Assembly: GCF_048593235.1 (NCBI RefSeq)
Contig: NC_133618.1
Coordinates: 47,092,478 to 47,156,477, forward strand
Length of the DNA stretch: 64,000 nt
Origin: Sminthopsis crassicaudata
Taxonomy: Eukaryota
Direction: 5' to 3'
The position numbers and the translations under genes were made by a program. Positions 24,600 through 52,914 of the stretch are shown piece after piece; the stretch's first letter is position 1; each line of letters opens with the position of its first letter. The notes below the pieces were generated by a model. That model was not told the origin of the DNA. It worked only from the letters and a program-made list of their open reading frames with translations, and did not search any database.

Positions 24600-24710
24600 C
24601 TGAAATTTCTTAGAGATCTTGAAGGCATGGGCATGGCGCCTTCTGACATTTTCGGAGGCCTCCCGTAAGGAAGGCTGATTGAATAAGGGAGTTTTGTCAT
24701 CTGGAAGTGG
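24600..24710 (-). CDS. UTP4: UTP4 coding exon 14 (111 nt)
   Basis: PLPDDKTPLFNQPSLREASENVRRRHAHAFKISKKFQ; donor CAG|GTGAGT. Confidence 0.96.
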
Positions 24711-25687
24711 CTAAAGACCAAAAAAAAAAAAAAAAAGCAATACATGTATAAAGCCTTCATTATTCTTAGTTTCTGCCAATGTCACCTGCTTTTGGCCCCT
24801 CTTACCAGGCTGTGCCTGAGCACAGCCGTACCCCCCAGTCAGACCAAAGATCAGCCTGGCCAGGGACTCTGTCAGGGAGAAAACTAGTGACCACGTGCTG
24901 CTGCCCTCCTGGGAGAACCTAGGTGATCTCCTTGGGACACGGCCATGTCTGAGGTGTGGAAGGGAAGGGCATGGGCCCAGCAGGGGAGTCCTTCCGGTCT
25001 GGCTCCCCTCCTGAGGCACTTGCCAGCCAGCCTTCTCACACGAGAGCCCCCCTCAGCCCTGGAGGTGGGCCTCTTGCACAAGCTGTAGTGAACCACTCGT
25101 TCCTGGCCATCTGTTTCCCCCACATTCCCTACCACCTACCACCTACCACCTCCCCCCCACCTGCACGTGTTCACAGACACGATAAACCCCTGCCATGTGC
25201 TTTGAGCTCGCTCATGTAACGAGCGCTATTTGCAGGATACAGGGCTGAGGGGCAGGCATCTCCCCAAGAAAAGCACGCCAGTGGAATGACTCAAGGTGGC
25301 AGCTGGCTGTGCCCGAAATATAGCCCAGCCCACCTAAACCCCGGGGATGCAAAAGAGCATTCTGAGAGGCGGATTTCACAGCTCTGCTCGGCTATCCCAG
25401 CCATCTGCCTCTCACTAAGAAGGCTGTGAAGTTTCCAATTCCAGCAGCTGGAGAGCATCCCTCGGGGTCACCCCAGGCCAAGTGGGTCTTGTCCAAGAAG
25501 TTAAAACTCTGCTTTGGTTTGCCCCCAGAAGGAGCCGGCTCAGCAAAAAAGCAAACCCAAGCTCTTTGCATTTACCCAGCAATCTCCAGGGTAGTTCAGT
25601 CAAGTATCACTGCGTCTGGGAAAGTCTGGCCTGTTCTGGGCCCCTTTTTGTAGGTGTGCAAGCTCCTGAAGGAAGGGAGGGACTCAC

Positions 25688-25873
25688 CATGGACTTATCA
25701 ATGATGCAGAACATGTAGGTGTCATGGAGGAGGATGTGGGTGGGCTTCTGGGGGTGGAAAGTGATGTGGGTGATGGGTGTGTCCCTCTCTAGCCAGAGGT
25801 AGTGCAGCCCCTGCTTCTGAACTTTCCGGCTCCAATCTGTGTACTGTTTTTGGGGGATGCTGAATTCAAAGAC
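25688..25873 (-). CDS. UTP4: UTP4 coding exon 13 (186 nt)
   Basis: VFEFSIPQKQYTDWSRKVQKQGLHYLWLERDTPITHITFHPQKPTHILLHDTYMFCIIDKSM; donor ATG|GTGAGT. Confidence 0.96.
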
Positions 25874-26489
25874 CTGGTAAAGAGCACGAGAAGAAAATCA
25901 AGTTTAGTCTTAATGGAAGACCCTGCACTTCCCTGGGTACAAATCAGAAAGAACTCACACCCATGCAGAGTGGAGAAATGTCCTGGAGGTCTGAGCCCTT
26001 TGATGGTGGATGCTGAAGAAATTGGGAGGAGACCCACTCGCTCCAAAGTGGGGCTAAGAAGGCCACGGGGGCTCTGGCTTTGGTGAGCATTCAGTCTGCC
26101 CCCCAAGACAGCCAAACAGGAGGAAATTCAGCTAAGATAAGGAAGCAGTCATTTCAGAGACTGCTCTCTCCCCCACCAGCCACATAATAATAGCACTTTT
26201 GTGATATGAGCCAGTAATTTAACTTTCCCGCATCTCCGTTTGTCAAACAAAAAGTAGCTGAAGAAGCAGGGATGGAGCAAAGTGAGGGAAGGGATTAGAT
26301 GGTCTCCAAAATCCTGCCTATCTCATGTTCACCAATGCTACACTCCGAGCCCATGGCCTATCTCCAGTAGCCAATCGGATTTTATCTGACACGGAGTGGG
26401 ACTGTCTGCCACCAGGCTCCCCACGGGGTCAGCACTGACGGACCCCAGCCTCCCCGTCCCAGAGTCAGGCAGCGGCAGCGGTCTCCCAC

Positions 26490-26585
26490 CTGTTGGTCTG
26501 AGTGCGCGATCACCAGGTTGTTGGTGCCGGGTGCAATGGCCAGGGCTGTCACAGGGAAGTTGTAAGCAGGCACTGTACAGTGAGG
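26490..26585 (-). CDS. UTP4: UTP4 coding exon 12 (96 nt)
   Basis: PHCTVPAYNFPVTALAIAPGTNNLVIAHSDQQ; donor CAG|GTGGGA. Confidence 0.96.
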
Positions 26586-26955
26586 CTAAGAAGGCAAAGA
26601 GAAGGAGGCGGGAAGCTGCGTGAATGCCCTGTGCTCTCACTGCTCTGAAACCCCTGGTTCCCTGGATTCCAGCCCAGACCCCCTCCCCACCGTGGGGAGG
26701 TGTCAGTCGGGGGCTGAATATGAGACACAGTCCTGTGCAGCTAAAGGCTGACTTTCTTAGACTTGGCTGAATTGTACCTAGACTCTGCTCCCCGAGGTTA
26801 CGTAGGAGAGGTGGACAGAGCCAGCCTGAGTATGGAAGACCACTTTGCTGCTCAGGCCCTGGTAGCCCACCATCACAGATTTCTAAGTTGCACCAATGAG
26901 ATCCTAGATCTAGACCAAAAATAAATTTATAATTAAAAATAAGTCTTGAACCTAC

Positions 26956-27062
26956 CTTCAGATGCTTCAAATCATAGACACTGACTCCACTACTGGGGCC
27001 GGCTGCAGCTAACCAGCTCCCATCTGGGCTTGCTGCCAGCAGAGTCGTGGCCTCCGATGTCC
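26956..27062 (-). CDS. UTP4: UTP4 coding exon 11 (107 nt)
   Basis: (G)TSEATTLLAASPDGSWLAAAGPSSGVSVYDLKHLK; donor AAG|GTAGGT. Confidence 0.96.
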
Positions 27063-27588
27063 CTGTGAGGAAAGAAGAGCTTGAAGGAGAGATTCCTTCA
27101 GTGAACTCTGCTCCCTTATGCCCAGGAAAAATTGCACTTCCCACGAATTTTGCTAAAATGCTCTCCAGGCTGGACGAGGGAGAAAAGAGAAACTGATCCA
27201 AGGGGGAAGAGGCAAGCTGGGCACCCCAGGGTCACACAGATAAATTGTGAAAATGCAAACGAACAATTTTAACTATCTCCTTTCCCACTACTTTTTTTTT
27301 TAAATGAGTAGCAAACAAGTATTCAATTCAATTGACTCGAACTATCACCAGTCATTTCTATATCCGACTCTGTGGCCCCATTTTTTCTTGGTAGAGATAC
27401 TTGGTCTTTCCCCAGCCTCTTTTACAAAGAAGGAAACTGAGGCAGGCGGGGCCAGAGTCACACAGCTGGTGAGGTCTGAGGACCAAAGGATCTCAGGAAG
27501 GAGCCTTCCTGATGACTCTGAGCCCGGCCCTCTTAGCACTAGGCTGTTACCGGGCAACCCTGACTTCAGCTTTACTTTTATTCATACC

Positions 27589-27745
27589 AGGGGCAGCTAG
27601 GTGGCGCAGTGGATAGAGCACCTGCCTTGAATTCAGGAGGATCCAAGTTCAAATCTGGTCTCAGACACTTAATTAACACTTCCTAGCTGTGTGACCCCGG
27701 GCAAGTCACTTAACCCCAGCCTCAGGGGGGAGAAAAAAATAGAAA
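27589..27745 (+). mobile_element. Young WSINE1 copy with perfect 16-bp TSD
   Basis: TACTTTTATTCATACC at 27573-27588 and 27746-27761. Confidence 0.92.
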
Positions 27746-28989
27746 TACTTTTATTCATACCTTATACAATTAATACAAACGCATCAACCTTGAAATGAGT
27801 TACAGTGAAAGAGAAGGTAGAATAATGCACAAATTAGACAATAATGCAAAATGACAAATGTCAAACCGTGTAGCCTCAATAATGCTTCAGAATTTTGAGG
27901 AGAGGAATCATGGGTGATCACTTTATGAAGGAACTTTACAGAGGGAGGAGAGTCACACAGTTAGGAGGCCCTCCTGACTCAGGCTGGCACCCTGTCCCCC
28001 TCTGTACTCCATATCTGGCTGCCCCTTGAAGTGCACATCTGATGGGGTCCCTTGGGCCCCCTCCCTACAGCCTCCAAGCCCCGTCTCCAGCCTTACTGCA
28101 TGGGCCTCCACATACCCTGAAATGTGCCCAGCTAGATCCTGGCCCTTTGTCCTGGAAGCCCCAAAGGTGGGCCATGATCTCTTTTTCCCGGTGGCTCATG
28201 AGACTCCCCCCATCTCCTCCTACAGGGAGCCCCTTCCTGATCCCAACCTCTGGGGCCTTTCCTCACAGATCACCTTCTATTAACCACTTTGTTCCGCTTC
28301 TCTGTGTATTCACACCCCACCTCTACTATAATGGATGCTCCCCCATGAGTGAGAACTTTTCACTCATGTACTTGCACTGGGCAGGGCGGGCACAGTTGCT
28401 TGTTGGCCAATTTGCCATCCATGGCTCTTGGCAATCTGGTCAGTCTCATATTGACCGTTTAATGCGCCTTAGGTTTCCCTGTGTTTCACTTCCAGCAGTC
28501 AGACCTTTCCCCACTTTTCCTCCTTGGATGCTCCTTCTGCCAGTGCTCCCTCCTCTTAGAATTCTCTTTCCTTCAAAACTCCGGTGCCATCTTCCACAGA
28601 AAGATGTTCCTGATTGCTCCCTATAATGCTTTACCCCCAACACACCTTGTACTGACTCTGTTTATATAAATGTGAATAAATGTGTTCCCCAATAAACCAC
28701 AAGCTTCTTGAGGGCAGAGACTTGTATTTGTGTATACCTGGTATCTATTATCATGCCCAGTTCAAAGCACCTCCCTGATAAAGGTCAGAAAACAAAGAGG
28801 AACCAGAAAGAGACTATTCACAGGCTGAATAAACTAGAAAGGAGGTGCTGAGGAACATCATAAATGGTCAGATAAGGTCGGGCTGATAGAGATTTGGTGC
28901 TGGCTGGGTTCTAAATGACAGAAGATAGAATGTGAATTTGGGGTACCCTGGGGCTCCTATTGTTGCTTGGCTTAATGGAAGTCATAGGT

Positions 28990-29170
28990 CAGTGGTCCTC
29001 AAACTTTTTGAATAGGGGGCCAGTTCACTGTCCCTCAGACTGTTGGGGGGCCGGACTATAATAAAAACAAAAGCTCACACTCTGTCTCCCACTCAGCCCA
29101 TTTGCCATAACCCAAGGGCCACATAAATGTCTGCATCCGGACAGCCTGAGGGCCGTAGTTTGAGAACCCA
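28990..29170. mobile_element. Second OC1-like hAT MITE, opposite orientation, in a UTP4 intron
   Basis: Reverse complement of the 17698-17891 element; left TIR CAGTGGTCCTCAAACT; right TIR damaged; TCATAGG flanks both sides. Confidence 0.8.
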
Positions 29171-29918
29171 TCATAGGAAAACCATTTTAGGTTCACTGGC
29201 CCCACCCAACTTCTGAAGAAAAGCAAGGAATCTTAATCAACTACAAAATGGATAATCAGACCCCTAAATCATCCCTGCCTACCTATGGTCTAAACAAAGT
29301 CATGGTTGCAAGAGGGGACCACATGATGGCTCTAGTACTCTCCAGTCCTACCCTTTGCCCCCCACCGGGAAGCCAGACCCCAAGCAGCATGCTCCTGCCG
29401 TTTCCTTTCCTGTATACCTCACTAACAATCTCATAACACGTCCTGCCAGGTGTGTGAAATGAACAACGGAGCAATCATTTTGGAAGATTGAGCCAGAGGT
29501 CCTGCAGGACAGACCATCTACTGAGTGAAGCACCATGAGAAGCAGTTAAAGAAGGTCAGAGGCCACTGCTTTTCCCCCTAAACTTAAATGAGCTCACGAG
29601 TATAACAGTTATTGAGTAAAACCAGTACACAACAAAAAACAACTGCCACTGTGGCGTAAAGGAAGAGCTTTGCATCCAGTTAACTTTTCCTTTGGCTGAA
29701 TCATGGAAGGAAAAACCCCACTGGAGGAAGAAGGGAGAATACTGCTGAATCTGTCCAATTCAGTCTCCATTCAACAGAAATCTCCTCCCCCTCTAAATTG
29801 CAACCATCTGGGTGAGTGCTGGGGGGAGGGAGCAGGGTGGGGCACACAACATCTGGGACTGGGAGGAGTGGAAATAGGACTAATTCTGACCATGCTAAAG
29901 CCAGCAATCAATCCTCAC

Positions 29919-30075
29919 CTGACTGAGGAGGGAAGGAATGCAGGTGTTTCAAGGCCCCCTCCGACAGCTGGATCACATGGAGAGAACCTTGGTTGGAGGC
30001 CACAAACAACTTTGTGGAGTCTGCAGAGAACAGAATCTGGAGGGCAGAATTCAGGAGCTTGGGCACTTTAGAAAC
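29919..30075 (-). CDS. UTP4: UTP4 coding exon 10 (157 nt)
   Basis: VSKVPKLLNSALQILFSADSTKLFVASNQGSLHVIQLSEGALKHLHSFPPQS(G); donor G|GTGAGG. Confidence 0.96.
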
Positions 30076-31045
30076 CTGAGAGCAGGCAAAAATTAAGAGT
30101 CAGCAATCCATTCTCTAGAATTTCCACATTTGAAATAATACTTAGAAATACTACTACCACAGCCAACAAACTTCAGAGCTTTAAGATTTCCACAATGTGT
30201 CTCGCCCTGAGGCGAGGCACCTGTTGCATGCTGGAGCTTTGCAGTCCCCTTGCTAATTCATACTTCTCCTTCCTCAACTCTTTTGTCAAATGCTACCCTT
30301 AAGAGCTACATGAGAATCTTGGCCCCACAATTCACCTAATTTTGTAGTCTTTGATGTTTTATTTTGAGGGGCCCATTTGGCTTCCCCAGATGGCCAAAGG
30401 GACTCATGACACAAAAATGTTAGGAAGCCCAATCTAGGGTGTTCTAGGGCATGTCACCACTCACAACAGAATGGGAATCATGGAATCATGACTGAAGAAA
30501 ATAATGCAACAGCATTTAGTAACCTAACTAGGGATCAGGAGCATAAATACAGAGTTAGAATGGAACTCAAGACAAGTAGCACTGATTAAGCAACTACTGT
30601 GTGCTAGGCATCTAAGCCCCATCTGTAAAGCTAAGGAGCCTGGAGGAGCTAAGGGGCTCACCTGGAACTTTAGGCCTCCTGGGACTTAGCCCCAGTTTCT
30701 CTAATGAGGGGGCTCTTTCCACTGTTTCCCCTGGCTTCCCATAAAAATATTCCTGGCCTGAATCATATCATGGGGAGGCTATAAAAACAAATGAGAAAAT
30801 GAAGAGGGTAAAAAGTCTTTATATAGGTGGTAGAGGTAAAAGAAAGCGGAAGATGACAATGATGAAAATAACTGCTGTTCACAGCCATAAAGAGAGGGAA
30901 GACAGGAAGAGCCCTGAAGGGCTTCTCAAGGCCTCAGATGCCCACCACCATGCATGGGGCATCCCAAGGAGCCCTGAAAAGAAAGCCTAAGATTCGAGGG
31001 TGGGGATTCCAACAAGGCAAAGACATAGGGTTGGATCTCACTTAC

Positions 31046-31168
31046 CCTTTTGATGCTCACACTGTTATTTTCATAATTCATCCGATAAAGATAAAATCTA
31101 GAAGCTGTAGAATAGGCTATCCAACTTCCACATGGGGAAATACAGCTACAACAAATGTTCTCAGGCCC
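31046..31168 (-). CDS. UTP4: UTP4 coding exon 9 (123 nt)
   Basis: GPENICCSCISPCGSWIAYSTASRFYLYRMNYENNSVSIKR; donor AGG|GTAAGT. Confidence 0.96.
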
Positions 31169-33146
31169 CTGAGAATGGAAGAGTCAGAGAAGACATTAAG
31201 TAAAAGTGGTAACAGAAGGTTCACCTTGGCTTCGGGTCCTCTCAAGGAACTATCACTCGATCCCAACAAAGAGTCGCTGCAGTTGGAGGTCAAGACTTCT
31301 AAGTCAAAAAAAAGAGGTTTGAAAATCCCAGTAGCGCTGCTCTCCCAGCATCCCACAAAATGCACCGTTTCCCCTAGTTTGGGTAAAGAAGGTAGAGGTG
31401 GGGGTGGAGGGAGCTGGCTGTAGTCCCTTTCTCAGTAGAGTAAATCAGAAGGAGGCCAGATCACTAACACATGCTTGCTGAATGAATGAATTCCTATATC
31501 CTGTTGTAGAAGGGATTCCTGGAGGGTAATAAAGGAGGCCTGAAATCCCTTCCAAATCTGAAATTCTATGGTTTGGGGAAGCTTTTAGAACCATTTACTT
31601 TCTGATTTGGTAGTTCGAAATATGCTTTAAATAATGATACTATTTGAAATGTAACTGGTGGCTTAGAACAACTCACATAAAAACAAACACAAGGCCAATG
31701 GGCTTGGGATGGGGTGGAAAGAAGAGGATTAGTCCTGGGGCCTGGGGAAGTTTTATGCAGGAGGAGGAAACGAAGGAGGATTCTGTGAAGGAACGTATCG
31801 TTCTCTGCCAGGTCTGGTAGGGCGAGGTCTCCCCTGCATGGGGGGCAGTCAGGGAAAAGGTGCAGAGAGCATGGAAGGGCGAAGGCCAGTCTGGCAGGAG
31901 TGCAAAGTGGGGGGAGGGCAGTAGTGACCAATGGAAAAGCTGGCTGGATCCGGGATGTGAAAGGTTTTAAAGGACACACAAAAGCAACAGGGAAGTGACC
32001 TAGGCAGGCTCTGGGAAAGTCACCCTGGCAGTCGCAAAGGGGAGAGAACAGAGCCGGAGATGAATCGCAGGTTATCCCCATGGCATCCGGGTGAGAGAGG
32101 AGGGGCCCGAAGTGGGCCGGGGACATCTGAGTGTGCAGAAGGATGAGGGCAAATGAGGGGAGCCCAGCTGGTGAGAGAGGAATCAGGGCTGCCACAAAAT
32201 TAACTCAGGGCCAATGTAAATGACACTGAATGAATGTAAACCAGCCCAAAGGAAAACCTGCCAGTGACTGCAACCAGCTGCAACCTCCCCCCCCCCCCCC
32301 CCAGTGACCTTTGCCAGTTCCAGCAACCCTCCACTTTGGTCTGATTCTGATTAGGACAAAGGGCAGCGTGGGGATCCACAATGGGGTGCTCCTACAGCCA
32401 GGCCCAGTCCTGGGAGTAAACCCTAAGAAACCCACCCAAGTCTACACCTCCTTGCACAGGCTTCCTGGGGAGCCCGCCCACTTGGTGGGTCTATTCCTTG
32501 GGCAGAGTACCTCCTTACACCGAGGCAGCCTCAAGGGCTAAGGCTCGCTATGTCATTTTGGCAAAGACAAGGTAACCAAACCTGCAGAGATCCAGAAGGC
32601 TCAACAGCAAGAGTGCAGAAAGGGCCAAAACTGACCCCTGGGGCCCAGACACAGAACCCAAGCCCCCGGGGAGAGAGTCCCCAGGCAGGGGCCGCAGAGA
32701 GCTCAGGAGGGGCCCGGACCCTGAAGGGTCGACAGCTGGACTTAATGATGAGCTCAGAAGTCTGACTGTGCAGGACTGAGGGAGCAGAGCCCACAGGCAA
32801 AGAGGGGATCTTTTCCAGGATGGAGGGTGAACTTTCATGCTGCAGAAAAAATGCCCACAGACAAACAGATCTGAGAGAAGGAGGGAAGGACTTGGGGGGC
32901 TTTCTGGGGACAGGACACATTTAAGTCAGTTGGCTCTGGTACACCACTGTGTCAAAGAAATAGAGGTCACGCCTTGCCTCTGATAAACCAGCTAACTGCA
33001 CATAAATGCCATTCAGTATGTATCTGTTGGATGAACCAGTGAATCAATTAATGAATTACACATAAAATGGAGTAATTTCAGAACAGGGATTCAAAATCCT
33101 ACCCTATATTTCTGGCTCTGTGCATTAAACTTAAGCTGTTTCTTAC

Positions 33147-33211
33147 CTTTTTTTTAAGCTGTAGCAAATGTTCTGCATTTCTGGAGAGTGGAAGGATGTC
33201 CTCATTCTTTC
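33147..33211 (-). CDS. UTP4: UTP4 coding exon 8 (65 nt)
   Basis: (G)KNEDILPLSRNAEHLLQLKKK; donor AAG|GTAAGA. Confidence 0.95.
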
Positions 33212-34341
33212 CTGGAACAAGAAATTCCACTAAGGATTTCCCTCTTAATGAAGTTATTCCTCACAGGATTAAAGTACACTTTCCCCTCTCAAACCACTTG
33301 ATTATGTATGAGAAATACCTTCAATCCTCACCAGAGTGGGATGAGGCCTATGAGAACAAGGCAGCTGTTTGGCTGGCCACCCACTGGTTAGTCCCTCACT
33401 GGGGCTAGGGGAGAGGGAAGCCTTCTGCTCTGCCCTGGACCCTCTCCCAACCAATCATTAAACGGGAACAACTCCACCCCATGATCTTGTATCAGGAGAA
33501 TTTACCAGCCCTGCCTACAGAGTGGAAGCAGATTGAGCCTGTCCTCTCATTTACTTGTGCCGTGAGGGACCTACATCATAACTGATATTTCCATGATTCT
33601 TCAAGGTTTGCCCTGTGAAAGTAAATACAAATATCTCCCTGCTTTACAGATGAGATTCTGAGAACTTAAGGAATCTGCTCATGGTCACCTTGCTAGTGTC
33701 TGAAGGCAGAACTCTGAGCTTAGGGCTTCCAAAGCCCAATTCCTTGCTCTAATCAATGAGAAAGTCTTTGAGCCAGAAACACTAAAAACCCTTTTATGGG
33801 TCCCCACCACTGTGCACAACGCAAGCCAAGTCACTTCTGGCTCAGGTCTCTCCTCTGTGAAAAGAGGTGGCTCCTTCTGAGCTCTAAGCTTCTGACTCTG
33901 GTTTATGTCACTTCTCTAAATTTCAGTTACTTAAAGTCTTTAAAAAAAAAAAAAAAAGGGGCAAAGACCTGGTGATATCCTATTGACCCTGTCAACTTTA
34001 AAATTATGTATATATAAACCCTACACTGTCTCCATTTAACAACAGCAGGGCCAAAATGTGGTCAACCTAGAGCAGTCCTCTATGTCAGCTTCCCAATCCT
34101 CCTGGGACTATGGTGCAACAGAGACAGATTGGGGATTCTTCGTTCCCTACTCTTCCGGTGGCTAGGCTCTTGGGTCTGAGGGTCAGGGCCAGGACATGGG
34201 GCATCCAAGAGTATGCATTTTGTAGAAATGTCCATTTTTCCAGATCATCCCAATTGACACTTTCTTTCCATGCCTCTGATTTGAGCATTTTTCTTCAGTG
34301 ACTATAACTTATTCCCAAGAAGAAGATAAGGCCCAGCTCAC

Positions 34342-34438
34342 CAGCTGCTTCAGTGGCTCCCAATCGCCAAAGTTCCAAACGCTGAGGAAACTGGAAGAGG
34401 AGGAGCTGCATCTTCTTAGCACAGGAGATGAGACGCCG
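34342..34438 (-). CDS. UTP4: UTP4 coding exon 7 (97 nt)
   Basis: RRLISCAKKMQLLLFQFPQRLELWRLGATEAA(G); donor G|GTGAGC. Confidence 0.96.
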
Positions 34439-35268
34439 CTGTAGCCAAGAAACAATCAGCATCAGAGTACTCTTTAAATGTCCCACAAATGAGCTTAAGG
34501 AAAACATCTTAGTATATTATACAAAAAAGGGAATTAACAAATAAAAACTAACAAATCCACAAAATGTTTTTCTTTTCTGCTCAATTTAACTGTTCTTCAA
34601 AACAGAATGATGTAAACAAGAAAAGGGAAAAATTGAACTAAATAAATAAATATTGGAGTGTGTAGAAGATCAGAGAGAATGTTAGATTTGGTATCAAGAG
34701 AATTAAGAGTTTCAATTTCAGCTCTGTGGCTTTTCAGGTGCCAGCGTGACCCTGGACATGGGAGCTCCCCTCTCTGGGCCTAAAGGATAGACTATGAGTC
34801 TTCCAACTCTATAAGCCTGAACCTGCAGAAGGGAGAAAATACCCATCCTTCTCACCTCCCCAGGTAGGGATCATAGGCACAGAGTATTAATTTAGCTGAA
34901 AAGAAATAACTGATTATAGTTAACTGATAACCAAATAAATACATTGTAAAATGGACCCACAAACTAAAGACAAGGGAGACAGAAATGATCTTTGCTGTCA
35001 TTATAAAAATCAGTTGGTTTTTTTTAACGTAGTCATAACAATATTTGGAATCTAGCTCAAAGAGGGGAAGATGCCCAAAGTTCTGAAAGGATAGATAGCA
35101 TTTATTTTTTTATAAAATGGTAACTGAGAAAACACTGACAACTTCCAATCCATTCGCCTAATTTCTAATGTCTAAAAAGTTTTTGTAGGAACAGACATGG
35201 GCATGGTGGGGAATGAGTACTCGCCCCTTGCATCATGTGCAAAGGACACGGGGGTTTCGGTCTCTTAC

Positions 35269-35532
35269 GTGTGGGAAGGTGATTTTCCGCAAGGCCGCGT
35301 CGTAATTCTTGACCTCCACCTTCTCCATGAGGGGCCGGATCACGAGGTGGGCATCCACGCCTCCAGAGATCAGCGCTGTCGGGCTGTGGGCCACGCAGCG
35401 CACGTCGTGCGTGTGATGCTGGAAGGGCTTTGTCCTCACCCACTGGCTTTGCTTGCCGTCCGACCTCGACGCGATCAGCTGGAAGTGGAATATGGTCCCC
35501 TCAGCCGTGCCCACCACCATGCTGTCTTCTTT
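35269..35532 (-). CDS. UTP4: UTP4 coding exon 6 (264 nt; appears to correspond to two exons in human)
   Basis: KEDSMVVGTAEGTIFHFQLIASRSDGKQSQWVRTKPFQHHTHDVRCVAHSPTALISGGVDAHLVIRPLMEKVEVKNYDAALRKITFPH, uninterrupted; acceptor CCCAG, donor CAC|GTAAGA. Confidence 0.96.
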
Positions 35533-36896
35533 CTGGGAGGAGGAAAGTCGGGAATCACGGTCAGCATGGCTCGAGAAAGCTCGCTGCCATCAGCCAGCTC
35601 CTTTCAGCTGCAGCCACTCCAGCTCGGGACGTTGTGTGCACTCTCTGCCTTTGGCTCTTACTCGTTTGTCTTTGACAGAAGTCAAAACTTATGTTAAAAA
35701 TGCAGGGGCTGGTTATAATAGAAGAGGAGGATGGAGGGGGAAGGGAAGAAAAGGAGGAAGAACAGCCAGTGTACAAGGCCAACTGAGCCAGAGTCAACTG
35801 CAGAGTGTTCACCAACAGCCAGGTCACAGCACCCTCTGCTGGCCACTCATGCCTACCACACTCCCCCTGCACTACTCCTTGAGCAACCCTGGCTGGAGGG
35901 CTTCAAGCTCAGGGAGCCCGGTCTCCCCCTCAGATTCTGCAGTCTCTGCCTCTGCCCCCTGCTCTACTTCTCTTCCACACCAACACATGTCACTCTTTAC
36001 TTCTGCCCAGAGGAAGCCAGCCAGGGATCTCCACAATACAAGATGAACTGAATTACAAATAGGGACTGGAAACTCTCAAGCCCAATGAATTAAGTCACTG
36101 AGTTTTGAAGACCGTGGGCAAGCTGGGAGTCAGTGGGCATCACAGCCTGAAGGCCAGACCAGGACACACTAGCTGTGCAGTCTCACCCAAGTCACTCGAA
36201 GTTGGAGCCTTAGCTCCCTCTATGAATGGGGGATTACCCTAGAAGATCCTCAAGGTGCCTTCCAGCTTTAAATCCTCTTATACGCCTTTGGGGAGGGAGA
36301 ATGAGTATTGGGGCAGGTGGCCGCTGTAAGCAGGCCAAAATCCCTGAGCGTGGAGCAGAGCTGGACTGTGCCATCCCCAGCACTTGCCAAGGGCAAGCAC
36401 AAGGCTGCTGGGCACAAAGGAGTGAATGTAGAGTGGAAGTGATTTCCGAGCTAATATTCATATTTATTGCTCAAACTCCACCAACCACGCCTCTAAAGAA
36501 CTCAAAACTCGCTTTCTTTTCTGCTTGGTGAAGAGCCGGCAAGGCCCCACTGGACTGGGATACGGCAGAGGGAACCTGTGGCCGGTGGCCAGAAAGCTGG
36601 GATCCAAGCAGAGGGTGGACACTTGTGGGGTGACCTCTGGCAACGGCTTTTTGGCTCCTGGAGCCTCAGTCTCCTCATTTACAAAAGGGAGATAATATTT
36701 CTTGCCCCAACAACCGCACAAAATTGTTGTGAGAAGTAACACAATGTCACATAAAACATAGCACAAACCAGAAAACACAAGATAAACCCGAGTTATTACC
36801 AAGAGGGAAAGAAATCATCCCCACAGGCTGAGTCTTCCTATAGGTCACTGCCCTGAGAGAAGTTTATTCCCTTCTGGTGACCCTGGAAAATGCCCC

Positions 36897-37054
36897 AGAC
36901 AGCTAGACAGTGCAGTGGACAGAGTATTAGTCCTGGAGGCAGGAGAACCCGAGTCCAAACCCAGCTTCAGACACTTAACAATCACTAGCTGTGTGACCCT
37001 GAACCAGTCCCTTAACTCCAACTGCCTCACCAAAAAGGGGAAAAAAAAAAAAAA
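36897..37054 (+). mobile_element. WSINE1 copy (more diverged)
   Basis: CAGCTAGACAGTGCAGTGGACAGAG...CAGACACTTAACAATCACTAGCTGTGTGACCCTG + A tail. Confidence 0.8.
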
Positions 37055-37578
37055 AGGAAAATGCCTCAAGACCTCACAATAAACTGTCTGGTTGCCAGGC
37101 CCCATCTCTGCCTGGAGGCTGAACCAGCAGGGGGTATAAAAGAAGTTGACCCCTTCTCTCTCTGGCAAGCTCTTTAAGTCCCAACTCAAATCCCCCCTTC
37201 CACACTAGCCTGCCCTCCCTAAGCCTTCTGAATTCCAGCACTTTCCTTCTTTTAATTAATTTCTAATGTATCCTGTAAATACCTTGCTTTGTATAGATGC
37301 ATTGGCATTGGCTTCCCCCATTAGACTGTAAGCTCCTTGAGGGCAGGGACCACCTTGGGCCTTTTTTGTATCCTTACTGCTTAATGTGCAGCGCCTGGCC
37401 CACCTATCCTTGCTGCTCAAGCATTTCAGCCATGTAGATTCTTTGCGACCCATTTGGGGTTTTCTTGGTAAAGCTACTGGAGTTATTTGCCATCCCCATA
37501 ATAAGCAGTTAATAAATGTTTAATGTTTATTATTGATTGATTCTTCAAATAATGGAAAGCATGAAAAGCAAAAGGCTT

Positions 37579-37726
37579 CCCCCTCCCCCCCCCCCCGAGG
37601 CTGGGGTTAAGTGACTTGCCCAGGGTCACACAGCTAGGAAGTGTTAAGTGTCTGAGACCAGATTTGAACTCGGGTCCTCCTGAATTCAAGGCTGGTGCTC
37701 TATCCACCGCGCCGCCTGGCTGTCCC
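37579..37726 (-). mobile_element. Young WSINE1 copy with 13-bp TSD and G-run tail
   Basis: AAGCAAAAGGCTT at 37566-37578 and 37727-37739; CpGs retained. Confidence 0.92.
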
Positions 37727-37749
37727 AAGCAAAAGGCTTTGAAAAAACT

Positions 37750-38930
37750 TTGTGAAACTCCAAAAGGGAAAAAGTCTGAAAGTGGGAAAATTGGCAAAGT
37801 ACATGTATGTGGAAATTTCAATTATACCACAAGGCAAGCAATGTACTGAGTTCATCCTACAGAATTTCAAAGATGAGCTAAACCCAACCTTCTATAGAGC
37901 AATTTGGAACAAAGTCCAAAGGATTATAAAATCATGCATACTCTTTGCCCCGACAATAGTACTACTAGGCATGTATCCCAAGAAACCCAAAAAAGAAAAA
38001 AAAGGGGGGGAAGAGGGGAAGAGAAAGGACCTCTATGTACAAAAATATTTATAGTAATTCTTCCCAGGGCCAAGAATTGGAAATAAAAGGGATGGCTGAA
38101 TAAAGTAGGATATGTAATTATGATAGAATACTATTGTTCTTTTTAAAAATTTTTTAACATAGGGGCTTTTTGTTTTCATAATACATGCAAAGATAGTTTT
38201 AAACCTTCAGCTTTGCAAAAAATCTTGGATTTCAAATTTTTCTCCCTCCCTCTCCTCAATCTGTCCCCCAGACAGCAAGCAATCCAATATAGGTTAAGCA
38301 TGTACAATTCTTCTATACATCTGTCCCCATTTAGCATGCTGCATAAGAAAAATCAGATCAAAAAGGAAAAAAATTGAGGAAGGAAAAAAAAAAAAAAAAA
38401 GCAAATAACAAAAAAGGTGAAAATATGATGTGATTCATGAAATACTATTGTTCTATAAGAAGTGAGGAGCAAGATGTTTTCAGAGAATCCTCAAAAGTTT
38501 TCCATGAGCTCATGCAAAGAGAACAGTGTGGTGTGCAAAATAATGACAATGTTGTGGGATGATCACCTGTAAATAACATTGCTATTCTCAGCAATACGGT
38601 GTTCCAAGACTACTCTGAAGGACTTATGATGAAAAATGCTATCCATATGCAGAGCAAAAAATTGATTATGTCTGAATACAGGCTGAAGCATAGTTTTTTT
38701 TTCCCTTGAGAATTTTGTGGAGGGTTTTTTATGGGGGAAGAGGGAAAATCTGTGTTTTCTTTTACAACATGACTTATGTAAATGTTTTGCATAACTTCAC
38801 ATGTATCTTCCCAATGGGGAAAAGGATGGGAAAAGAAGGAGGGAATCTGGAACTCAAAGCTTCAAAAAGAAATGTTAAAAACTATTTTACCAAAAAATTT
38901 TTTTAGAAATTGTTTTATTTTTAACTAGGG
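37750..38930. mobile_element. Degraded L1 ORF2-3'/3'UTR fragments, with an inverted L1 piece at about 38150-38420
   Basis: TGCATACTCTTTGCCCCGACAATAGTACTACTAGGCATGTATCCCAAG and later GGAATACTAT-like L1 motifs. Confidence 0.7.
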
Positions 38931-39614
38931 AAAATAAAATATTAAACTAAAATGAGCAATCTAATCCAATCACCTAATTCTAAGAATGAAGATGGCCCAG
39001 ATAAAACAACTTGCTCAAGCTACTTTAACACAAATCTGTTCAAATCCATTTTCTAAGCCATCACTTCAAAGAGATGGGAAGTGAGGAGTCAGTCCTCCAA
39101 GAAACCTCGGGATTCTTGATCTCCTTTCACAAGCAGGAGCTGGAGCCGCCTGCTTCTACGTTGTAAGATCTGGAGAGAAGCCCTCTACGGACAAACTAGC
39201 CAGGTCAGTGAGGAGTGAGAAGGCACAGGTGGCTGACATCAATCCTGGAGGTACCTCCCCAGGCCCACCCTCCAGAACTACACTTAAAAGGCAAGATTGT
39301 TTACAAACCAAATCTGCAGGTATTATCACCTGTCATATGTCCCAGAGAACATCCTGCCAAGTATCTTGCCCTCATGAAGCTGACAATCAGCAGGGAAGAT
39401 AGGATATCCTATTCAAAGAGCAATATCACACAACCGATGTGTAAGAGCATCTGACCAACGCTGAGGTCAGTAAGGGACAGAAGCTGAGGCCCCGAGAGGC
39501 CAGAGGGCCTGCCCAGAGTCCCACAAGAGCTGAGCCTGGATTCTGGCCCCTCGATCCTGTCTTCCCCTCACCACATACTTCATGCATAAACTGCGCCTGC
39601 AGGGACACACTCAC

Positions 39615-39826
39615 CTCCGCCACAGCTATGGACAGCACATCAGAATTGGAGAGGGGATGTGTCTGCATCAGGGTGCCGGTCTCTGAGTCCCAGAACTGGA
39701 CCACGCCAGCTGAGTCTGTGCTCACGACGGTCCCATCCGACAGGAAGGCCACCCCCCACACGACACACCTGCGCCGATGCGGACCTGGGTGCCTCCGATC
39801 CATTAGCATCTTCTGGGTTGTGCTGC
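39615..39826 (-). CDS. UTP4: UTP4 coding exon 5 (212 nt)
   Basis: (G)STTQKMLMDRRHPGPHRRRCVVWGVAFLSDGTVVSTDSAGVVQFWDSETGTLMQTHPLSNSDVLSIAVAE; donor GAG|GTGAGT. Confidence 0.96.
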
Positions 39827-40154
39827 CTGAGAAACAAGCACCCCAAGAGTCAGAGATAAGACCCTCTGTCCTACAGCCTTTCTTCAGCTCCCCCACCTCA
39901 ACAACGAAAACCTTGAGCTAGAGCCAGGGACAGTGAGACAAGTGTGAATCTTCATCACCATTTCAGAGATGACAAGGGGAAGCCTCAACAAGCTTGGTGG
40001 GCTAGCTCCTCCTCTCCAGTCTCCCAGATGGAAGGAGGGCTCACCCATTACTCCCCTTGAGAGAGGATGCTCATGAACTAGTTCTCTGGGCCCAATCAGG
40101 GAAGGGAGGATGCCCCAGTACAAACATGAGAGAAGTAGGGATAAATCACAAGAG

Positions 40155-40297
40155 TTTTTCCTGGCAAGGCAATTGGGGTTAAGTGACTTGCCCAGGGTCA
40201 CATAGCTACTAAGTGTTAAGTATCAGAGGAAGGATTTGAACTCAGGTCCTCCTGGCTCCAGGGCTGATGCTCTATCCATTACACTCCTAGCTGCCCC
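40155..40297 (-). mobile_element. WSINE1 copy
   Basis: Reverse-complement body ending CTAGCTGCCCC. Confidence 0.82.
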
Positions 40298-40744
40298 AAC
40301 TTCTAAGAAATTATAAAGGAAAGAGCTCATGAAGTAGCTGCTAAAAATGTCAACGGGAGACTGAGCTATAAAGGCACTCAGAGTACTTTATTCCAAGGCC
40401 TCAAATTGCTAATACAAATCCTCAAAGGTTTTTGCTCATTTTTCAGCTTAAAGAAAACCTTTTCTCTTCTTTTAAAAATCCCATTGACTCCCCTGGCCAC
40501 AATACAAAATTTCTTTAAAGCAAAAAATAAAGTCAAGTAAAATAAGCCAGGACATTTGTCATGTTTTGTGACACATCCCCAGACCCCCATATTCCACCAC
40601 GAGCTGAGAGAAACGCCTTGCCGATAATGCTCTGAAATCACAATTGGTCACAGCATTCACTAGAGTTTGGAAACCTCTTCTTGAAACCCCCAAACCTTGC
40701 TCCAAATAAAAGAGATGTGCAGCCTGAACTAAGAACATCGGTAC

Positions 40745-40834
40745 CTGATTTAACATCAAGCACAGCAACGTAGTCTATGGAGCCAGCTGCAATGTGAGTA
40801 CCAGATGGATGCCAGCTTAATGAGAGTATTCGAC
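40745..40834 (-). CDS. UTP4: UTP4 coding exon 4 (90 nt)
   Basis: (G)RILSLSWHPSGTHIAAGSIDYVAVLDVKS(G); AG/GT boundaries in the correct phase. Confidence 0.96.
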
Positions 40835-41358
40835 CTGGCAGGGAGAGAATAAAAAAGAATTTGGTTTACAAAGAAACAGGCACAAGTCCCACAGTTCTGT
40901 CCAACAACTAGCTGCAACGTGAATCTTCTATCACCTTCCCCTCCTTCTCTATATTCTAGCACATTATGTACTCTAGTATCTATGCTTTGAGGTCCTACAA
41001 TCATGTATAACATCCTCAGCTCTGAGCTGTGAGGATCTAATAGTACTAACTGAGGAATGCTAGAGAGAATGTAACAAATTCCAGTCCTTATTCGTTAGAA
41101 GATGCCATATTAAAGCAACAAGTCACATTAGCTATTGCTTTTAATAAATCTTATTTAGTTTCTATGAATACTCTTGGGATTTCTCTTTTGTATTTGGTTT
41201 TCTAGCCTGGGGGACCTGACATGGATCACCTTGGACATCTGCGAACAAGGGGATAGCCCCTCTCAGAGGCCAGATAAGACATCTCTTGCAATAAGCACAA
41301 AAGTAACAATTCCTGGAAAGGTCATCCCCATCATTCAGACCCTTAAAATGCCCTTTAC

Positions 41359-41443
41359 CTTTCTGTCGTTCTAAAGTCCGCTCAAGCTGGATTTTGTCTG
41401 GGGCAACATGGAACAGCTTCACAGACCCATCCTCACAACCTAT
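41359..41443 (-). CDS. UTP4: UTP4 coding exon 3 (85 nt)
   Basis: IGCEDGSVKLFHVAPDKIQLERTLERQK(G); acceptor GACAG, donor G|GTAAAG. Confidence 0.96.
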
Positions 41444-41557
41444 CTGTCAGGAGAAGAAGAGAAATAGAAAAGATGAACATATGTGAAAATAAATAAAAAT
41501 GCTAAAGTTTTTTTTTAATTTTTTAGTTAATCAAATATTTTGAAAGAGGGAGAATTC

Positions 41558-42499
41558 CTCAGATGATGAAATTGAAACTATATCCACTCATATGAAAGAG
41601 TGTTCCAAATCACTACCGATTAGAGAAATGCAAATTAAGACAACTCTGAGATACCACTACACACCTGTCAGATTGGCTAAGATGACAGGAACAAATAATG
41701 ATGAATGTTGGAGGGGATGTGGGAAAACTGGGACACTGATACATTGCTGGTGGAGCTGTGAAAGAATCCGGTCATTCTGGAGAGTAATTTGGAACTATGC
41801 CCAAAAAGTTGTCAATCTGTGCATACCCTTTGATCCAGCATTGCTGCTACTGGGCTTATATCCCAAAGAAATACTAAAGAGCAGAAAGGGACCTGTATGT
41901 GCCAAAATGTTTGTGGCAGCTCTTTTTGTTGTAGCTAGAAACTGGAAGATGAATGGATGTCCATCAGTTGGAGAATGGCTGGGTAAATTATGGTATGTGA
42001 AGGTTATGGAATATTATTGCTCTGTAAGAAATGACCAGCAGGAGGAATACAGAGAGGTTTGGAGAGACTTACATCAACTGATGCTGAGTGAAATGAGCAG
42101 AACCAGAAGATCACTATACACTTCAACAACAATACTGTATGAGGATGTATTCTGATGGAAGTGGAAATCTTCAACATAAAGAAGAACCAACTCACTTCCA
42201 GTTGATCAATGATGGACAGAGGTAGCTACACCCAGAGAAGAAACACTGGGAAGTGAATGTAAATTGTTAGCACTAATATCTGTCTGCCTAGGTTACTTAT
42301 ACCTTCGGAATCTAATGCTTATTGTGCAACAAGAAAATGGTATTTACACACATGTATTGTATCTAGACTATATTGTAACACATGTAAAATGTATGGGATT
42401 GCCTGTCATCTAAGGGAGGGGGGGGGATAATTTGGAAAAATGAATACAAGGGATAATATTATTTAAAAAAAAATTAAAAAAAAAAAAGAAAAGAAAAAA
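41558..42499 (+). mobile_element. 5'-truncated LINE-1 (ORF2 C-terminus, 3'UTR, A tail), antisense in a UTP4 intron
   Basis: ORF 41592-42155 MQIKTTLRYHYTPVRLAKM...CWRGCGKTGTLIHCWW is the L1 ORF2 Cys-rich end; A-rich tail; 16-bp TSD GAAAGAGGG(A/G)AATTC-type at 41542-41557 and 42500-42515 with one mismatch. Confidence 0.93.
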
Positions 42500-43673
42500 G
42501 AAAGAGGGAAAATTCTGGCATCAGGAAAATCATATCCTGGTAAGCAAAACAAGCTCAACAGTACCCTAAAGAGAAAGGTTACAGCGATGTCCACCAGGGT
42601 ATTCACTCAGAGTGAAGCACAACAGACATGCTGCTGGCTGAGCTAGAAAGACCATTGATCTTAGGAGTCAGGAAGGAGGAGCTGAGTTCGAACCCTAATG
42701 ATCACTAGCTTCTTAAATTCCTTAACCCCTTTCCTAATTTCCTAGATGGGAAGAGAAAAAGAAACTATTGACAATCTTATGACAGAATGCTCCAAACCAG
42801 GAATCCAGGGGAGAGGGTTCTGGAAACCCCTGAAGCTCCCTCTCCCTTCTGTAAAAGGTGATAAAGGAAGAGCTGTGACTGGGCCTAAGCATTCTGGAGA
42901 ACAATCCGGCAGAACTCCAAAAGTCGATACATACTCCACGTACTCCATAATGTCTTCACAGAGTGGCATTATTTTATGGTGGCAAGATACAGGAAAAATA
43001 CAATTGTAGTACATGAGTGTGCTGGGCTTTTACTGACCGTATTGGAAGATGACAAATACCAAGAATTCAGGGAAATTTGGAAGAGTACATATGAACTGAA
43101 CCAGAGAGAAGTAATTGGGACCAGGAGAAAAAGTAGGTTACCAGACAACAGGATGTCCATCAATGTTATGATTAATCAAAGTTTTAGGTAAAATTGAAAT
43201 ATAACTCATCCTTTTTATAAAGGGGTGAGGCAGTGGCCTACAGTTAATAAACAAAACAAATACTAATAAATAAGGCCAATGTGTTCATTTATTTTGCTTA
43301 GTTATATTTGTTTTATGGGAGAATTTTAGGGGAAAAGTTATTGGGAAATAAAACTGATATTAAAAAGAGCATCAATAGAAATGTTAATTTTTTAAGAAGA
43401 CAACTAAGGAAAAATAAATGAATGCAAATAGGATAAAAACAAAGTGTGAATAATCCCAATATGAGCTCTAATTCCATCAATGGGAATACTCCAGAAGCAG
43501 GATAGGGTAGAAATCTCTACCAAACACTCATATTCTGAAAGAAAAATTTTCTTAACTCTCTATTATCATGCAGAAGGAAACCTCAGTAAGTCTGAAAAAA
43601 ACAAAACAAAAAAAACCCAACCCCATAATATGTATTTATAGTAAATAATCCCCTTTCCCCCTCATACACTAAC

Positions 43674-43865
43674 CGCAAGATATGAGCCACTTGGGTCAGC
43701 AGCCATGCTCCAAATGGGACCACCAAAGCCATCAACAGAATACTTGACACTCAGCTTTTCCAAGTCATATTCAATAACGTCACCATTGAGTCCAGCACTG
43801 AAGAGCCGCTGTCCTTTTGTCCAGCACATAGCTTCTGTGGATCGACCCTCATGGCCTGGGAAAAA
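43674..43865 (-). CDS. UTP4: UTP4 coding exon 2 (192 nt)
   Basis: FFPGHEGRSTEAMCWTKGQRLFSAGLNGDVIEYDLEKLSVKYSVDGFGGPIWSMAADPSGSYLA; AG/GT boundaries. Confidence 0.96.
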
Positions 43866-43969
43866 CTACAAAAACACAGTAATACTTCACTTGTTAAATA
43901 ATCATGATCATTTATTAGCATCTACTGAGTAGTTAGACAATGCATGGAATTTCTATCACAACCCAAAGC

Positions 43970-45880
43970 AGATGAAACAATCGGATTTGTTTCTGAAAAT
44001 ATTTAGATGTTTTGGTTCTGTTCTTATTGATGTATGTTTAGTTTTGAGAAGCAGTGTGTTTGTATACATTGCCGACCCCTACTTGAGATATCCTGGTTCT
44101 GTGATTCTCAGGAGTCCTACAACTTTATTTTTTGGAACATATTCTTCAACATTAGCCCTTGCAAAAGCCTGTGTTCCAATTCCCCTTCCTCTATGCTCTC
44201 CCCTAGATGGCTAGTCCAATATATGTTAAACATGTTATAAATATATGCTAAATCCAATATATGCATATTTATACAGTTATTGTGCCTAACAAGAAAAAAA
44301 TAAGACAGCAAACAACAACAAAAAGAGTGAAAATGCTATATTGTGGTTTACATTCAGTTCCCACAGTCCTCCTTTTGGGTGTAGATGGCTCTCTTCATTA
44401 CTGAACAATTGGAACCGATTTGAATCATCTCATTGTTGAAGAGAGCCAAGTCCATCAGAATTGATGAATCTTGAACTGGCTTTATCCAATGTGGTTAAAA
44501 GAGTCACTCAAAAACCCTTGGAAATATCAGTTTTTGCTACAAAAGAGGCACCCACAGCAGTCCTTCATCAAGGAGACAGTGTGATTGAGTGGGTGAACCT
44601 CCCAGCACAACCAGAACAAAGCCTTACTCCTTACCTAGTGTTTGTGGCTAGAATTTTATTAAAGGCCATTAATTGATTAGTACAATTATCTGGGATAAGA
44701 CCTGACAAGATATACACCTTTTATACCAACGCACAAATTAATATATGCTGCGAGATCATCCCAGAGTGGCAAATTTTATTGGCCACAACTCCAAATTTTA
44801 CACACGGATCTCCATTAAAGATAACCCGGCTACTACATAATTGGAGATGGATTTTTGAAGAAAAGGTTTCTAAGATTCCTCTTAAAGGACCAACAATCCT
44901 TACAGATGACTGCAAAGAAAATAATCTTGTTGTTACTGTGAAATAATGATTTCCTGGTTCTGCTCATTTCACTCAGCATCAGTTCATGTCAGTCTCTCCA
45001 GGCCTCTCTGAAATCATCCTGCTGATCATTTCTTACAGAATAATATAATATAGAATAATAATATTCCATAACATTTATGTCCTGATTTCATGAACTGATG
45101 CTGTGTACATGAGATCACTGTACAACAACAAGATTATATGATGATCAATTCTGATGGACGTGGCTCTTTTCAACAATGAGGTGATTCAAGCCAATTCCAA
45201 TAAACTTGTGATGGAGAGACCCATCTGTACCCCCTTTGATCTGATTTTTTTCTTGTATAGCATGATAAATGTGGAAATATACATTTTTATTATAGTTTTT
45301 ATTTACAGGATATATGCATGGGTAATTTTCCAACAATGACCCTTGCAAAACCTTCTGTTTCAACTTTTTCCCTCCTTCCCTCCACCCCCTCCCCTAGATG
45401 GCAGGTAGACCAATACATGTTAAATATGTTAAATACAATATATGTATACACATCCATACAGTTATTTTGCTATACAAGAAAAATTGGACTTAGAAATAAT
45501 GTAAACTTAACCTGAGAAGGAAATCAAAAACAGAGGGAGTGGAAATGCTATGTTGTGGTTCACCCTCATTTCCATAGTTCTTTCACTGGGTGTAGCTGGT
45601 CCTTTTCATTATTGAACAAATGGAAGTGATTTGGTTCATCTCATTGTTGAAGAGAGCCACATCCATCAGAATTGATCATCATATAGTATTGTTCCTGAAT
45701 ATATATATAACCATCTCCTGGTCCTGCACACTTCACTCAGCATCAGCTCATGTAAGTCTCTCCAGGCCTTTCTGAAATCATCCTGCTGGTCGTTTCTAAA
45801 GAATAATAATATTCCATAACATTCATATACCACAATTTATTCAATTATTCTCCAATTGATGGGCATCCATTCAATTTTTG
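43970..45880 (-). mobile_element. Cluster of L1 3'-end fragments (mostly minus), interrupted by the ERV pol piece
   Basis: Repeated marsupial L1 3' motifs such as GAAGAGAGCCA.GTCCATCAGAATTGAT and CATTTCACTCAGCATCAGTTCATG. Confidence 0.8.
44467..44929 (+). mobile_element. Class II (betaretrovirus-like) ERV pol fragment: RT connection domain to RNase H start
   Basis: Frame from 44461: KPLEISVFATKEAPTAVLHQGDSVIEWVNLP...KAIN*LVQLSGIRPDKI...PEWQILL...WRWIFEEKVSKIPLKGPTILTD, resembling HERV-K/MMTV-type PLQLLIFAT..PTG.I.Q...VEW.FLP...P.KI...W...TVFTDG; one in-frame TGA. Confidence 0.8.
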
Positions 45881-52900: not shown

Positions 52901-52914
52901 GGAAGTGCGCAGAC

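What the first reader, a model, noticed from the sequence alone, without database searches (positions are those of the whole stretch)
35269..35532. Apparent precise intron loss in UTP4
This 264-nt exon encodes ...TALISG-GVDAHLVIRP... with no interruption. As I recall, human UTP4 has 17 exons (16 coding), with this region split 172+92 nt by a short phase-1 intron at c.910/911. 172+92 = 264 exactly, and all 14 other coding exons here match the recalled human sizes, giving the same 686 aa. The missing intron would sit at 35361/35360 (TCT GGA G|GC). Exact intron losses are rare in mammals and are usually attributed to gene conversion by reverse-transcribed mRNA, typically affecting short introns in highly expressed genes, which fits UTP4.
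Basis: partly seen in the sequence, partly recalled or inferred. Interest (0 to 1): 0.7.

Follow-up and report, generated by a model that had tools for sequence, protein, structure and literature searches.

The report
Old marsupial intron loss in UTP4
A short intron that fish, frogs, birds, platypus and placental mammals all carry in the ribosome-assembly gene UTP4 has been cut out exactly in this marsupial and in three other australidelphian species: a real but ordinary kind of event that may be useful as a lineage marker.

Summary
Window 35269-35532 (- strand) is a clean 264-nt, phase 0/0 exon with AG and GT flanks. It encodes UTP4 residues 247-334. It is coding exon 6 of a 15-exon, 686-codon gene.

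In platypus, Weddell seal, Chinese hamster, ostrich, Xenopus and bowfin the same stretch is two exons of 172 and 92 nt.

Tasmanian devil, koala and monito del monte (Dromiciops) have the same fused 264-nt exon as the window. The window's exons translate identically to the fat-tailed dunnart protein.

So this is a precise loss of an intron at least as old as bony vertebrates. It was fixed before the last common ancestor of Australidelphia and was not specific to this genome. Whether opossums share it could not be tested.

The lost intron was the shortest in the gene in mammals. Neighbouring introns are kept. Junction microhomology (AG|G, 3-4 nt) is no greater than at retained introns. The mechanism therefore stays inferred: recombination with spliced cDNA versus microhomology-mediated deletion.

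I found no paper reporting this case. It is a new member of a well-known kind, of modest interest.

The parts
35269..35532 (-). Fused coding exon 6 of UTP4 (264 nt, phase 0/0, residues 247-334). It equals ancestral exons 6 (172 nt) plus 7 (92 nt).
   Evidence: alignment A2.
35360..35361 (-). Scar-less junction where the ancestral phase-1 intron sat (TCT GGA G^GC GTG, Gly304 codon).
   Evidence: Outgroups read GGAG|gt...ag|GC (Xenopus: |GT) at this point. Marsupials read GGAG^GC (Dromiciops: GGAG^GT).
39615..39826 (-). Coding exon 5 (212 nt). The 4082-nt intron between it and the fused exon is retained.
34342..34438 (-). Coding exon 7 here (97 nt; ancestral exon 8). The 830-nt intron after the fused exon is retained.
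23332..51131 (-). Whole UTP4 coding span: 15 exons at 51131-50973, 43865-43674, 41443-41359, 40834-40745, 39826-39615, 35532-35269, 34438-34342, 33211-33147, 31168-31046, 30075-29919, 27062-26956, 26585-26490, 25873-25688, 24710-24600 and 23448-23332.
   Evidence: all AG/GT, 2061 nt, open frame; exon-by-exon identical to the Sminthopsis crassicaudata protein P0289.

Best explanation
This is the orthologous, intron-containing UTP4 (cirhin) gene of a dasyurid marsupial, by sequence the fat-tailed dunnart.

Shown:
- One ancestral spliceosomal intron has been removed to the base. It was short (about 70-180 nt in living outgroups) and phase 1, inside the Gly304 codon between c.910 and c.911.
- The removal fused a 172-nt and a 92-nt exon into one 264-nt exon and changed nothing else in the protein.
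- The deletion is shared with Tasmanian devil, koala and Dromiciops. It was therefore fixed once, in the marsupial stem or the australidelphian stem, and the window simply inherits it.

Inferred, not shown (about 55% of my weight for the mechanism):
- A spliced UTP4 mRNA was reverse-transcribed in the germ line by LINE-1 reverse transcriptase.
- The cDNA recombined with the gene over a short tract that spanned only this tiny intron.

There is no sign of a functional consequence. The gene now needs one splicing step fewer.
For: Exact spliced mappings of annotated proteins onto their own loci:
- 16 coding exons, with 172+92, in platypus L001, ostrich L005, Xenopus L006 and bowfin L008.
- The same 172+92 pair in Chinese hamster L004 and Weddell seal L009, whose deposited gene models are faulty elsewhere (15 and 14 exons).
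- 15 exons, with 264, in Sarcophilus L002, Dromiciops L003 and koala L007, and in the window.

Splice-site sequences and intron lengths of 118, 95, 99, 91, 72 and 179 nt. Alignment A2 shows the marsupial gap covering exactly the intron.

Many short ORFs from genomic contigs of placentals and birds break or read through at ISGG, residue 58 of the exon.

It is not a retrocopy:
- 14 other introns are retained, with the same exon sizes.
- A PDZ-bearing first exon, which I read from memory as syntrophin-like, lies downstream. A long Pro/Gly-rich ORF lies head-to-head upstream.

It is not an assembly slip:
- Four independent marsupial assemblies agree.
- Contigs of DNA runs from two separate samples and studies hold about 0.9 of the words of window 34000-39900.

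For the cDNA mechanism:
- The lost intron is the shortest in the gene in platypus, seal, hamster and Xenopus.
[quoted passage not shown] It also reports that losses in therian mammals are attributed to LINE-1-made cDNA (PMC7605268).
Against: Mechanism:
- Only one intron is gone, and both neighbours are kept.
- The site is mid-gene (c.910 of 2061, intron 6 of 15), so there is no 3' bias.
- No UTP4 processed pseudogene could be looked for in this genome.

Timing:
- No didelphid or caenolestid locus could be fetched, so a loss in the stem of all marsupials cannot be told from a loss in stem Australidelphia.
- Peramelemorphia and Notoryctes were not sampled.

Human DNA was not examined. The placental state rests on hamster, seal and unnamed placental ORF fragments.
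Confidence: 0.85

Rival explanations
1. The event is the same, but the mechanism is DNA-level. A double-strand break in or near the tiny intron was repaired by microhomology-mediated end joining. The repair used the AG|G(T) repeat that the 5' and 3' splice junctions share, which excises the intron exactly.
For: Both junctions share in-register AG|G in platypus, hamster, seal and ostrich. They share AG|GT in Xenopus and bowfin, and Dromiciops still reads GGAG^GT. The aligner could place the AG on either side of the gap. The intron was very short. A single-intron, mid-gene loss needs no extra assumption under this model. The mechanism is described for flies and worms and was suggested for birds (PMC7605268).
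Against: Microhomology of 3-4 nt is just the splice-site consensus. Retained introns of the same gene have 0-6 nt, so there is no excess. In mice and rats, microhomology was no more common at lost than at conserved introns (PMC3652778).
Confidence: 0.35
2. The intron was gained in other lineages and marsupials keep the ancestral intron-less state.
Against: The intron is at the identical codon position and phase in bowfin, Xenopus, ostrich, platypus, hamster and seal. This reading would need at least three independent gains at the same nucleotide: in the lineages to placentals, to monotremes, and to sauropsids or earlier.
Confidence: 0.01
3. Artefact: the window carries a retrocopy, a cDNA contaminant or a mis-assembly rather than the true gene.
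For: None.
Against: Fourteen introns are retained with canonical splice sites. Neighbouring genes are in place. The fused exon is identical in structure in devil, koala and Dromiciops assemblies. Contigs from DNA runs of two samples hold the region.
Confidence: 0.01
4. A recent event specific to the dunnart or to dasyurids.
For: The window alone cannot exclude it.
Against: Koala (Diprotodontia) and Dromiciops (Microbiotheria) have the same 264-nt exon with the same junction.
Confidence: 0.01

Closest known systems
Exact intron losses catalogued in mammals (Coulombe-Huntington & Majewski 2007, recalled and not readable here; Churakov et al. 2020, PMC7605268, 87 verified cases)
   Same: The deletion is base-exact and the flanking exons are intact. 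It is shared by two or more related species, and the lost intron is very short. UTP4 is a small-subunit processome component, so a broadly expressed housekeeping gene is expected; expression was not tested here.
   Different: UTP4/CIRH1A does not occur in the main text of the papers I could read, and their supplementary tables were not available. Those screens had few opossum introns as targets, so marsupial-stem losses are thinly covered. This case is old (australidelphian ancestor or earlier), not one of the rodent or shrew bursts.
Reverse-transcriptase (mRNA-mediated) model of intron loss (Zhu & Niu 2013, PMC3652778)
   Same: The loss is precise, the intron is short, and the gene is likely to be expressed in the germ line.
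   Different: There is no joint loss of adjacent introns and no 3' bias. Retrocopy abundance was not testable.
Microhomology-mediated intron loss (van Schendel & Tijsterman 2013, cited in PMC7605268)
   Same: The intron is short and an in-register direct repeat AG|G(T) is present at both junctions.
   Different: The repeat is no longer than at retained introns of the same gene. PMC7605268 says the mechanism had not yet been described for amniotes.

Membership tests
Precise spliceosomal intron loss (lineage-specific) | The intron is present at the homologous nucleotide and phase in outgroups on both sides of the clade. | tested here: met
   A 172|92 split, phase 1, GGAG|gt..ag|G, in bowfin, Xenopus, ostrich, platypus, hamster and seal.
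Precise spliceosomal intron loss (lineage-specific) | The intron is completely absent, with flanking exons intact and no indel, in at least two related species (the criterion used in PMC7605268). | tested here: met
   A 264-nt exon in the window, Sarcophilus, koala and Dromiciops. Alignment A2 shows the gap equal to the intron.
Precise spliceosomal intron loss (lineage-specific) | The locus is the orthologous parent gene, not a retrogene. | tested here: met
   14 other introns are retained with the same exon sizes as in other vertebrates. Neighbouring ORFs flank the gene. The exons are identical to the annotated dunnart UTP4 protein.
RT/cDNA-mediated intron loss | Adjacent introns are lost together. 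| tested here: not met
   A single intron is lost. Neighbouring introns of 4082 and 830 nt are retained.
RT/cDNA-mediated intron loss | Bias towards the 3' end of the gene. | tested here: not met
   The site is at c.910 of 2061, intron 6 of 15.
RT/cDNA-mediated intron loss | The lost intron is short. | tested here: met
   It is the shortest intron of the gene in platypus (118), seal (99), hamster (95) and Xenopus (72), and the second shortest in ostrich (91).
RT/cDNA-mediated intron loss | The gene is germ-line or housekeeping expressed and has processed pseudogenes in the genome. | not testable with these tools
   Only the window is held and no reads were laid. One degenerate intron-less UTP4-like ORF of placental type (P0014) hints that retrocopies exist in some mammal.
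Microhomology-mediated (MMEJ) intron loss | The in-register direct repeat at the two junctions is longer than at retained introns. | tested here: not met
   3-4 nt at this intron against 0-6 nt at the other introns of the same genes.

The most novel reading that the evidence does not exclude
The loss may be a clean rare genomic change that separates Australidelphia (including South American Dromiciops) from didelphid and caenolestid marsupials. If opossums lack the intron too, it would be a synapomorphy of all living marsupials. Together with the untested SLC52A3 case noted elsewhere in this genome, it could point to a burst of intron losses on the marsupial stem that existing mammal screens under-sampled.
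Probability: 0.35. Interest if true: 0.45.

Novelty: new member of a known kind. Interest (0 to 1): 0.3.

Why it matters
Exact intron losses are rare in mammals; published screens verified on the order of a hundred. They have very little homoplasy, so each well-placed case is a useful phylogenetic character. Each also adds a data point for the unresolved question of how introns are lost, by cDNA recombination or by end joining.

This case is unusually clean. The intron is at least as old as bony vertebrates. It is the shortest in the gene, it was removed to the base, and it is absent in three marsupial orders. It changes nothing about UTP4 function. The exon structure is already implicit in public annotations, so the value is comparative rather than mechanistic.

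Tried and rejected
1. Opossum state. The Monodelphis protein P0139 is UniRef-only with no contig. Its 686-residue core (P0139:11-696) is not in the collection. Only 15 of the 23 cluster members are ever listed. A word search with the exon found no marsupial genomic fragments. The didelphid state therefore remains unknown.

2. Loci that could not be fetched. Macrotis is not on record.

No splicing or read-level support is claimed.

4. Literature. Searches for UTP4 or CIRH1A with intron loss returned nothing. The supplementary tables of PMC7605268 are not held. Coulombe-Huntington & Majewski 2007 is not held.

5. Junction microhomology as a discriminator of mechanism. It is uninformative.

6. 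Spliced model. I did not search with the joined model. Exons were searched and compared one by one by reference. A script checked frame continuity across the 15 exons and printed only counts.

7. Human sequence. I fetched and compared no human contig. Proteins that looked human or primate (P0001, P0007, P0273) were returned by searches but were not used for locus look-ups.

Full report
**What is at the coordinates**

On the - strand the sequence reads ...cctcccag|AAAGAAGAC...TTCCCACAC|gtaaga. The exon therefore runs 35532->35269 and is 264 nt, with a canonical acceptor and donor. It translates in frame 1 to 88 residues without a stop, including ...HSPTALISGGVDAHLVIRPLMEK.... Against solved structures it matches human UTP4 (7mq8 chain LN) residues 248-334 with E=9e-46, and more weakly fungal Utp4. 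Pfam gives only weak WD40 and beta-propeller hits for so short a piece.

**The gene and the species**

Mapping vertebrate UTP4 proteins on the window finds 15 coding exons on the - strand between 51131 and 23332.

I refined them exon by exon against the Tasmanian devil exons. They measure 159, 192, 85, 90, 212, 264, 97, 65, 123, 157, 107, 96, 186, 111 and 117 nt. Every internal boundary is AG/GT. The lengths sum to 2061 nt with an open frame of 686 codons.

I translated each exon separately, whole codons only, and compared it in place. The window is identical to the Sminthopsis crassicaudata protein XP_074142222.1 (P0289) at 682 of 683 positions; the one difference is the stop codon. It is 97.7-97.8% identical to devil and Antechinus and 91-93% to other marsupials. 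The window is therefore fat-tailed dunnart or something indistinguishable from it.

I did not submit the joined model to any search tool. Exons were sent one by one by reference.

**Neighbours**

Downstream of the gene on the same strand lies a CpG-rich first exon (8680-9243) that encodes a PDZ domain. From memory it is syntrophin-like. Upstream, head-to-head, lies a 678-codon Pro/Gly-rich ORF (60226-62262) with no Pfam family. Together with the 14 retained introns, this makes the locus the parent gene and not a retrocopy.

**Is there an intron at this place elsewhere?**

A full-library search with the exon gave the first hint. Many short ORFs from genomic contigs match only residues 1-58, or only residues about 51-88. 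Several (P0002, P0300-P0304, placental-like; P0305 and P0306, bird-like) read through an in-frame insert exactly after ISGG.

I then fetched the annotated loci of named orthologues and mapped each protein onto its own DNA, requiring an exact spliced translation (mapping).

| Species (locus) | Exons at this place | Intron length |
|---|---|---|
| Platypus (L001) | 172 + 92 | 118 nt |
| Weddell seal (L009) | 172 + 92 | 99 nt |
| Chinese hamster (L004) | 172 + 92 | 95 nt |
| Ostrich (L005) | 172 + 92 | 91 nt |
| Xenopus laevis (L006) | 172 + 92 | 72 nt |
| Bowfin (L008) | 172 + 92 | 179 nt |
| Tasmanian devil (L002) | 264 | none |
| Koala (L007) | 264 | none |
| Dromiciops (L003) | 264 | none |
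| Window (dunnart) | 264 | none |

- Platypus, ostrich, Xenopus and bowfin each have 16 coding exons, in which positions 6 and 7 are the 172-nt and 92-nt exons.
- The hamster and seal gene models are faulty elsewhere but show the same 172|92 pair.
- Devil, koala and Dromiciops have 15 coding exons, with all the other exon sizes the same as the window.
- At the nucleotide level the outgroups read ...TCTGGAG|gta...cag|GC... or close variants; Xenopus reads |GT.
- The marsupials read ...TCTGGAG^GCGTGGA...; Dromiciops reads ^GTGTGG.
- The ten-species alignment A2 shows the marsupial gap covering the intron and nothing else.

**Direction and age**

The intron occupies the same codon position and phase in a ray-finned fish, an amphibian, a bird, a monotreme and two placentals. 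It is missing only in marsupials. It is therefore an ancestral intron of bony vertebrates that was lost, not gained elsewhere.

The fused exon is shared by Dasyuromorphia (dunnart, devil), Diprotodontia (koala) and Microbiotheria (Dromiciops). The loss was therefore fixed no later than the australidelphian ancestor.

I could not obtain any didelphid or caenolestid locus. Bilby was not on record. Whether the loss belongs to the stem of all marsupials or to Australidelphia alone is open.

**Artefact checks**

Four independent assemblies agree. The flanking introns (4082 and 830 nt in the window) are present. Contigs of DNA runs from two different samples and studies of the same organism hold about 0.9 of the sampled words of window 34000-39900.

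That used the only call. I have no read-level view and no splicing evidence, and I sent nothing from those places afterwards.

**Mechanism**

What is shown:
- The excision is exact.
- It removed a single intron, in the middle of the gene (intron 6 of 15, c.910 of 2061).
- That intron is the shortest of the gene in platypus, seal, hamster and Xenopus, and the second shortest in ostrich.

What is inferred is how it happened. There are two candidates.

1. Recombination with a reverse-transcribed spliced mRNA. This is the usual account for therian mammals. In mice and rats, intron loss is more frequent in housekeeping genes and tracks processed-pseudogene abundance, while junction microhomology is not enriched at lost introns (PMC3652778). 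Losses in therians are linked to LINE-1 activity (PMC7605268). UTP4 is a core small-subunit processome protein, so broad expression is expected from established knowledge. I did not test expression.

2. Microhomology-mediated end joining. This fits the single, tiny, mid-gene loss without extra assumptions, and both junctions share in-register AG|G(T). But that repeat is only the splice-site consensus, and retained introns of the same genes have 0-6 nt.

The classical signatures of the cDNA model, joint loss of neighbours and 3' bias, are absent. I put about 55% on cDNA recombination and 35% on end joining, and leave the rest open.

**Comparison with what is known, and novelty**

Exact intron losses in mammals are a described class. 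One screen verified 87 cases and noted earlier lists (PMC7605268). I found no mention of UTP4 or CIRH1A in that literature, but the supplementary tables were not readable and the 2007 catalogue is not held.

The 15-exon structure is implicit in the public annotations of several marsupials. This is therefore a new, clean member of a known kind. It may be useful as a rare genomic change for marsupial phylogeny. It has no visible functional consequence.

An earlier first-stage note reports a similar candidate in SLC52A3 in the same genome. I did not test it.

**Verdict**

The event is old and shared, and the mechanism is unresolved. Interest is modest.

Noticed in passing
P0014 (212 aa; aligned): An ORF of placental type runs across the ISG|G site and on into later exons without introns. 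It is degenerate (for example FGSIDTHLVTHSLIEK). It looks like a UTP4 processed pseudogene in some unnamed mammal. I did not fetch its contig, because the species is unknown and could be human.
   Followed up: no
window 8680-9243 (-): A CpG-rich first exon encodes MRLASAAAA... followed by a PDZ domain (Pfam PF00595, E=1.5e-19). From memory this is a syntrophin-like gene, downstream of UTP4 on the same strand.
   Followed up: partly
window 60226-62262 (+): A 678-codon uninterrupted Pro/Gly/Asn-rich repetitive ORF lies head-to-head with UTP4 beyond a CpG island (about 52000-54000). It has no Pfam family. From memory it resembles the DERPC/CHTF8 locus that neighbours UTP4 in placentals.
   Followed up: partly
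L004 (Cricetulus KE671890.1) and L009 (Leptonychotes KB714904.1): The deposited gene models are faulty. The hamster model reads through the donor of the 92-nt exon (giving 190 nt), has a 71-nt exon where other species have the 97-nt one, and lacks the 96-nt exon. The seal model merges or skips later exons (294 and 219 nt). The 172|92 pair is intact in both.
   Followed up: partly
Nothing was laid, and these places were not sent anywhere afterwards.
   Followed up: no
window 41592-42155 (+): A 187-codon ORF inside a UTP4 intron. From memory it resembles the C-terminal part of a LINE-1 ORF2 (IREMQIKTTLRYH...). Pfam gave no hit.
   Followed up: partly
This may be a second marsupial intron loss.
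   Followed up: no
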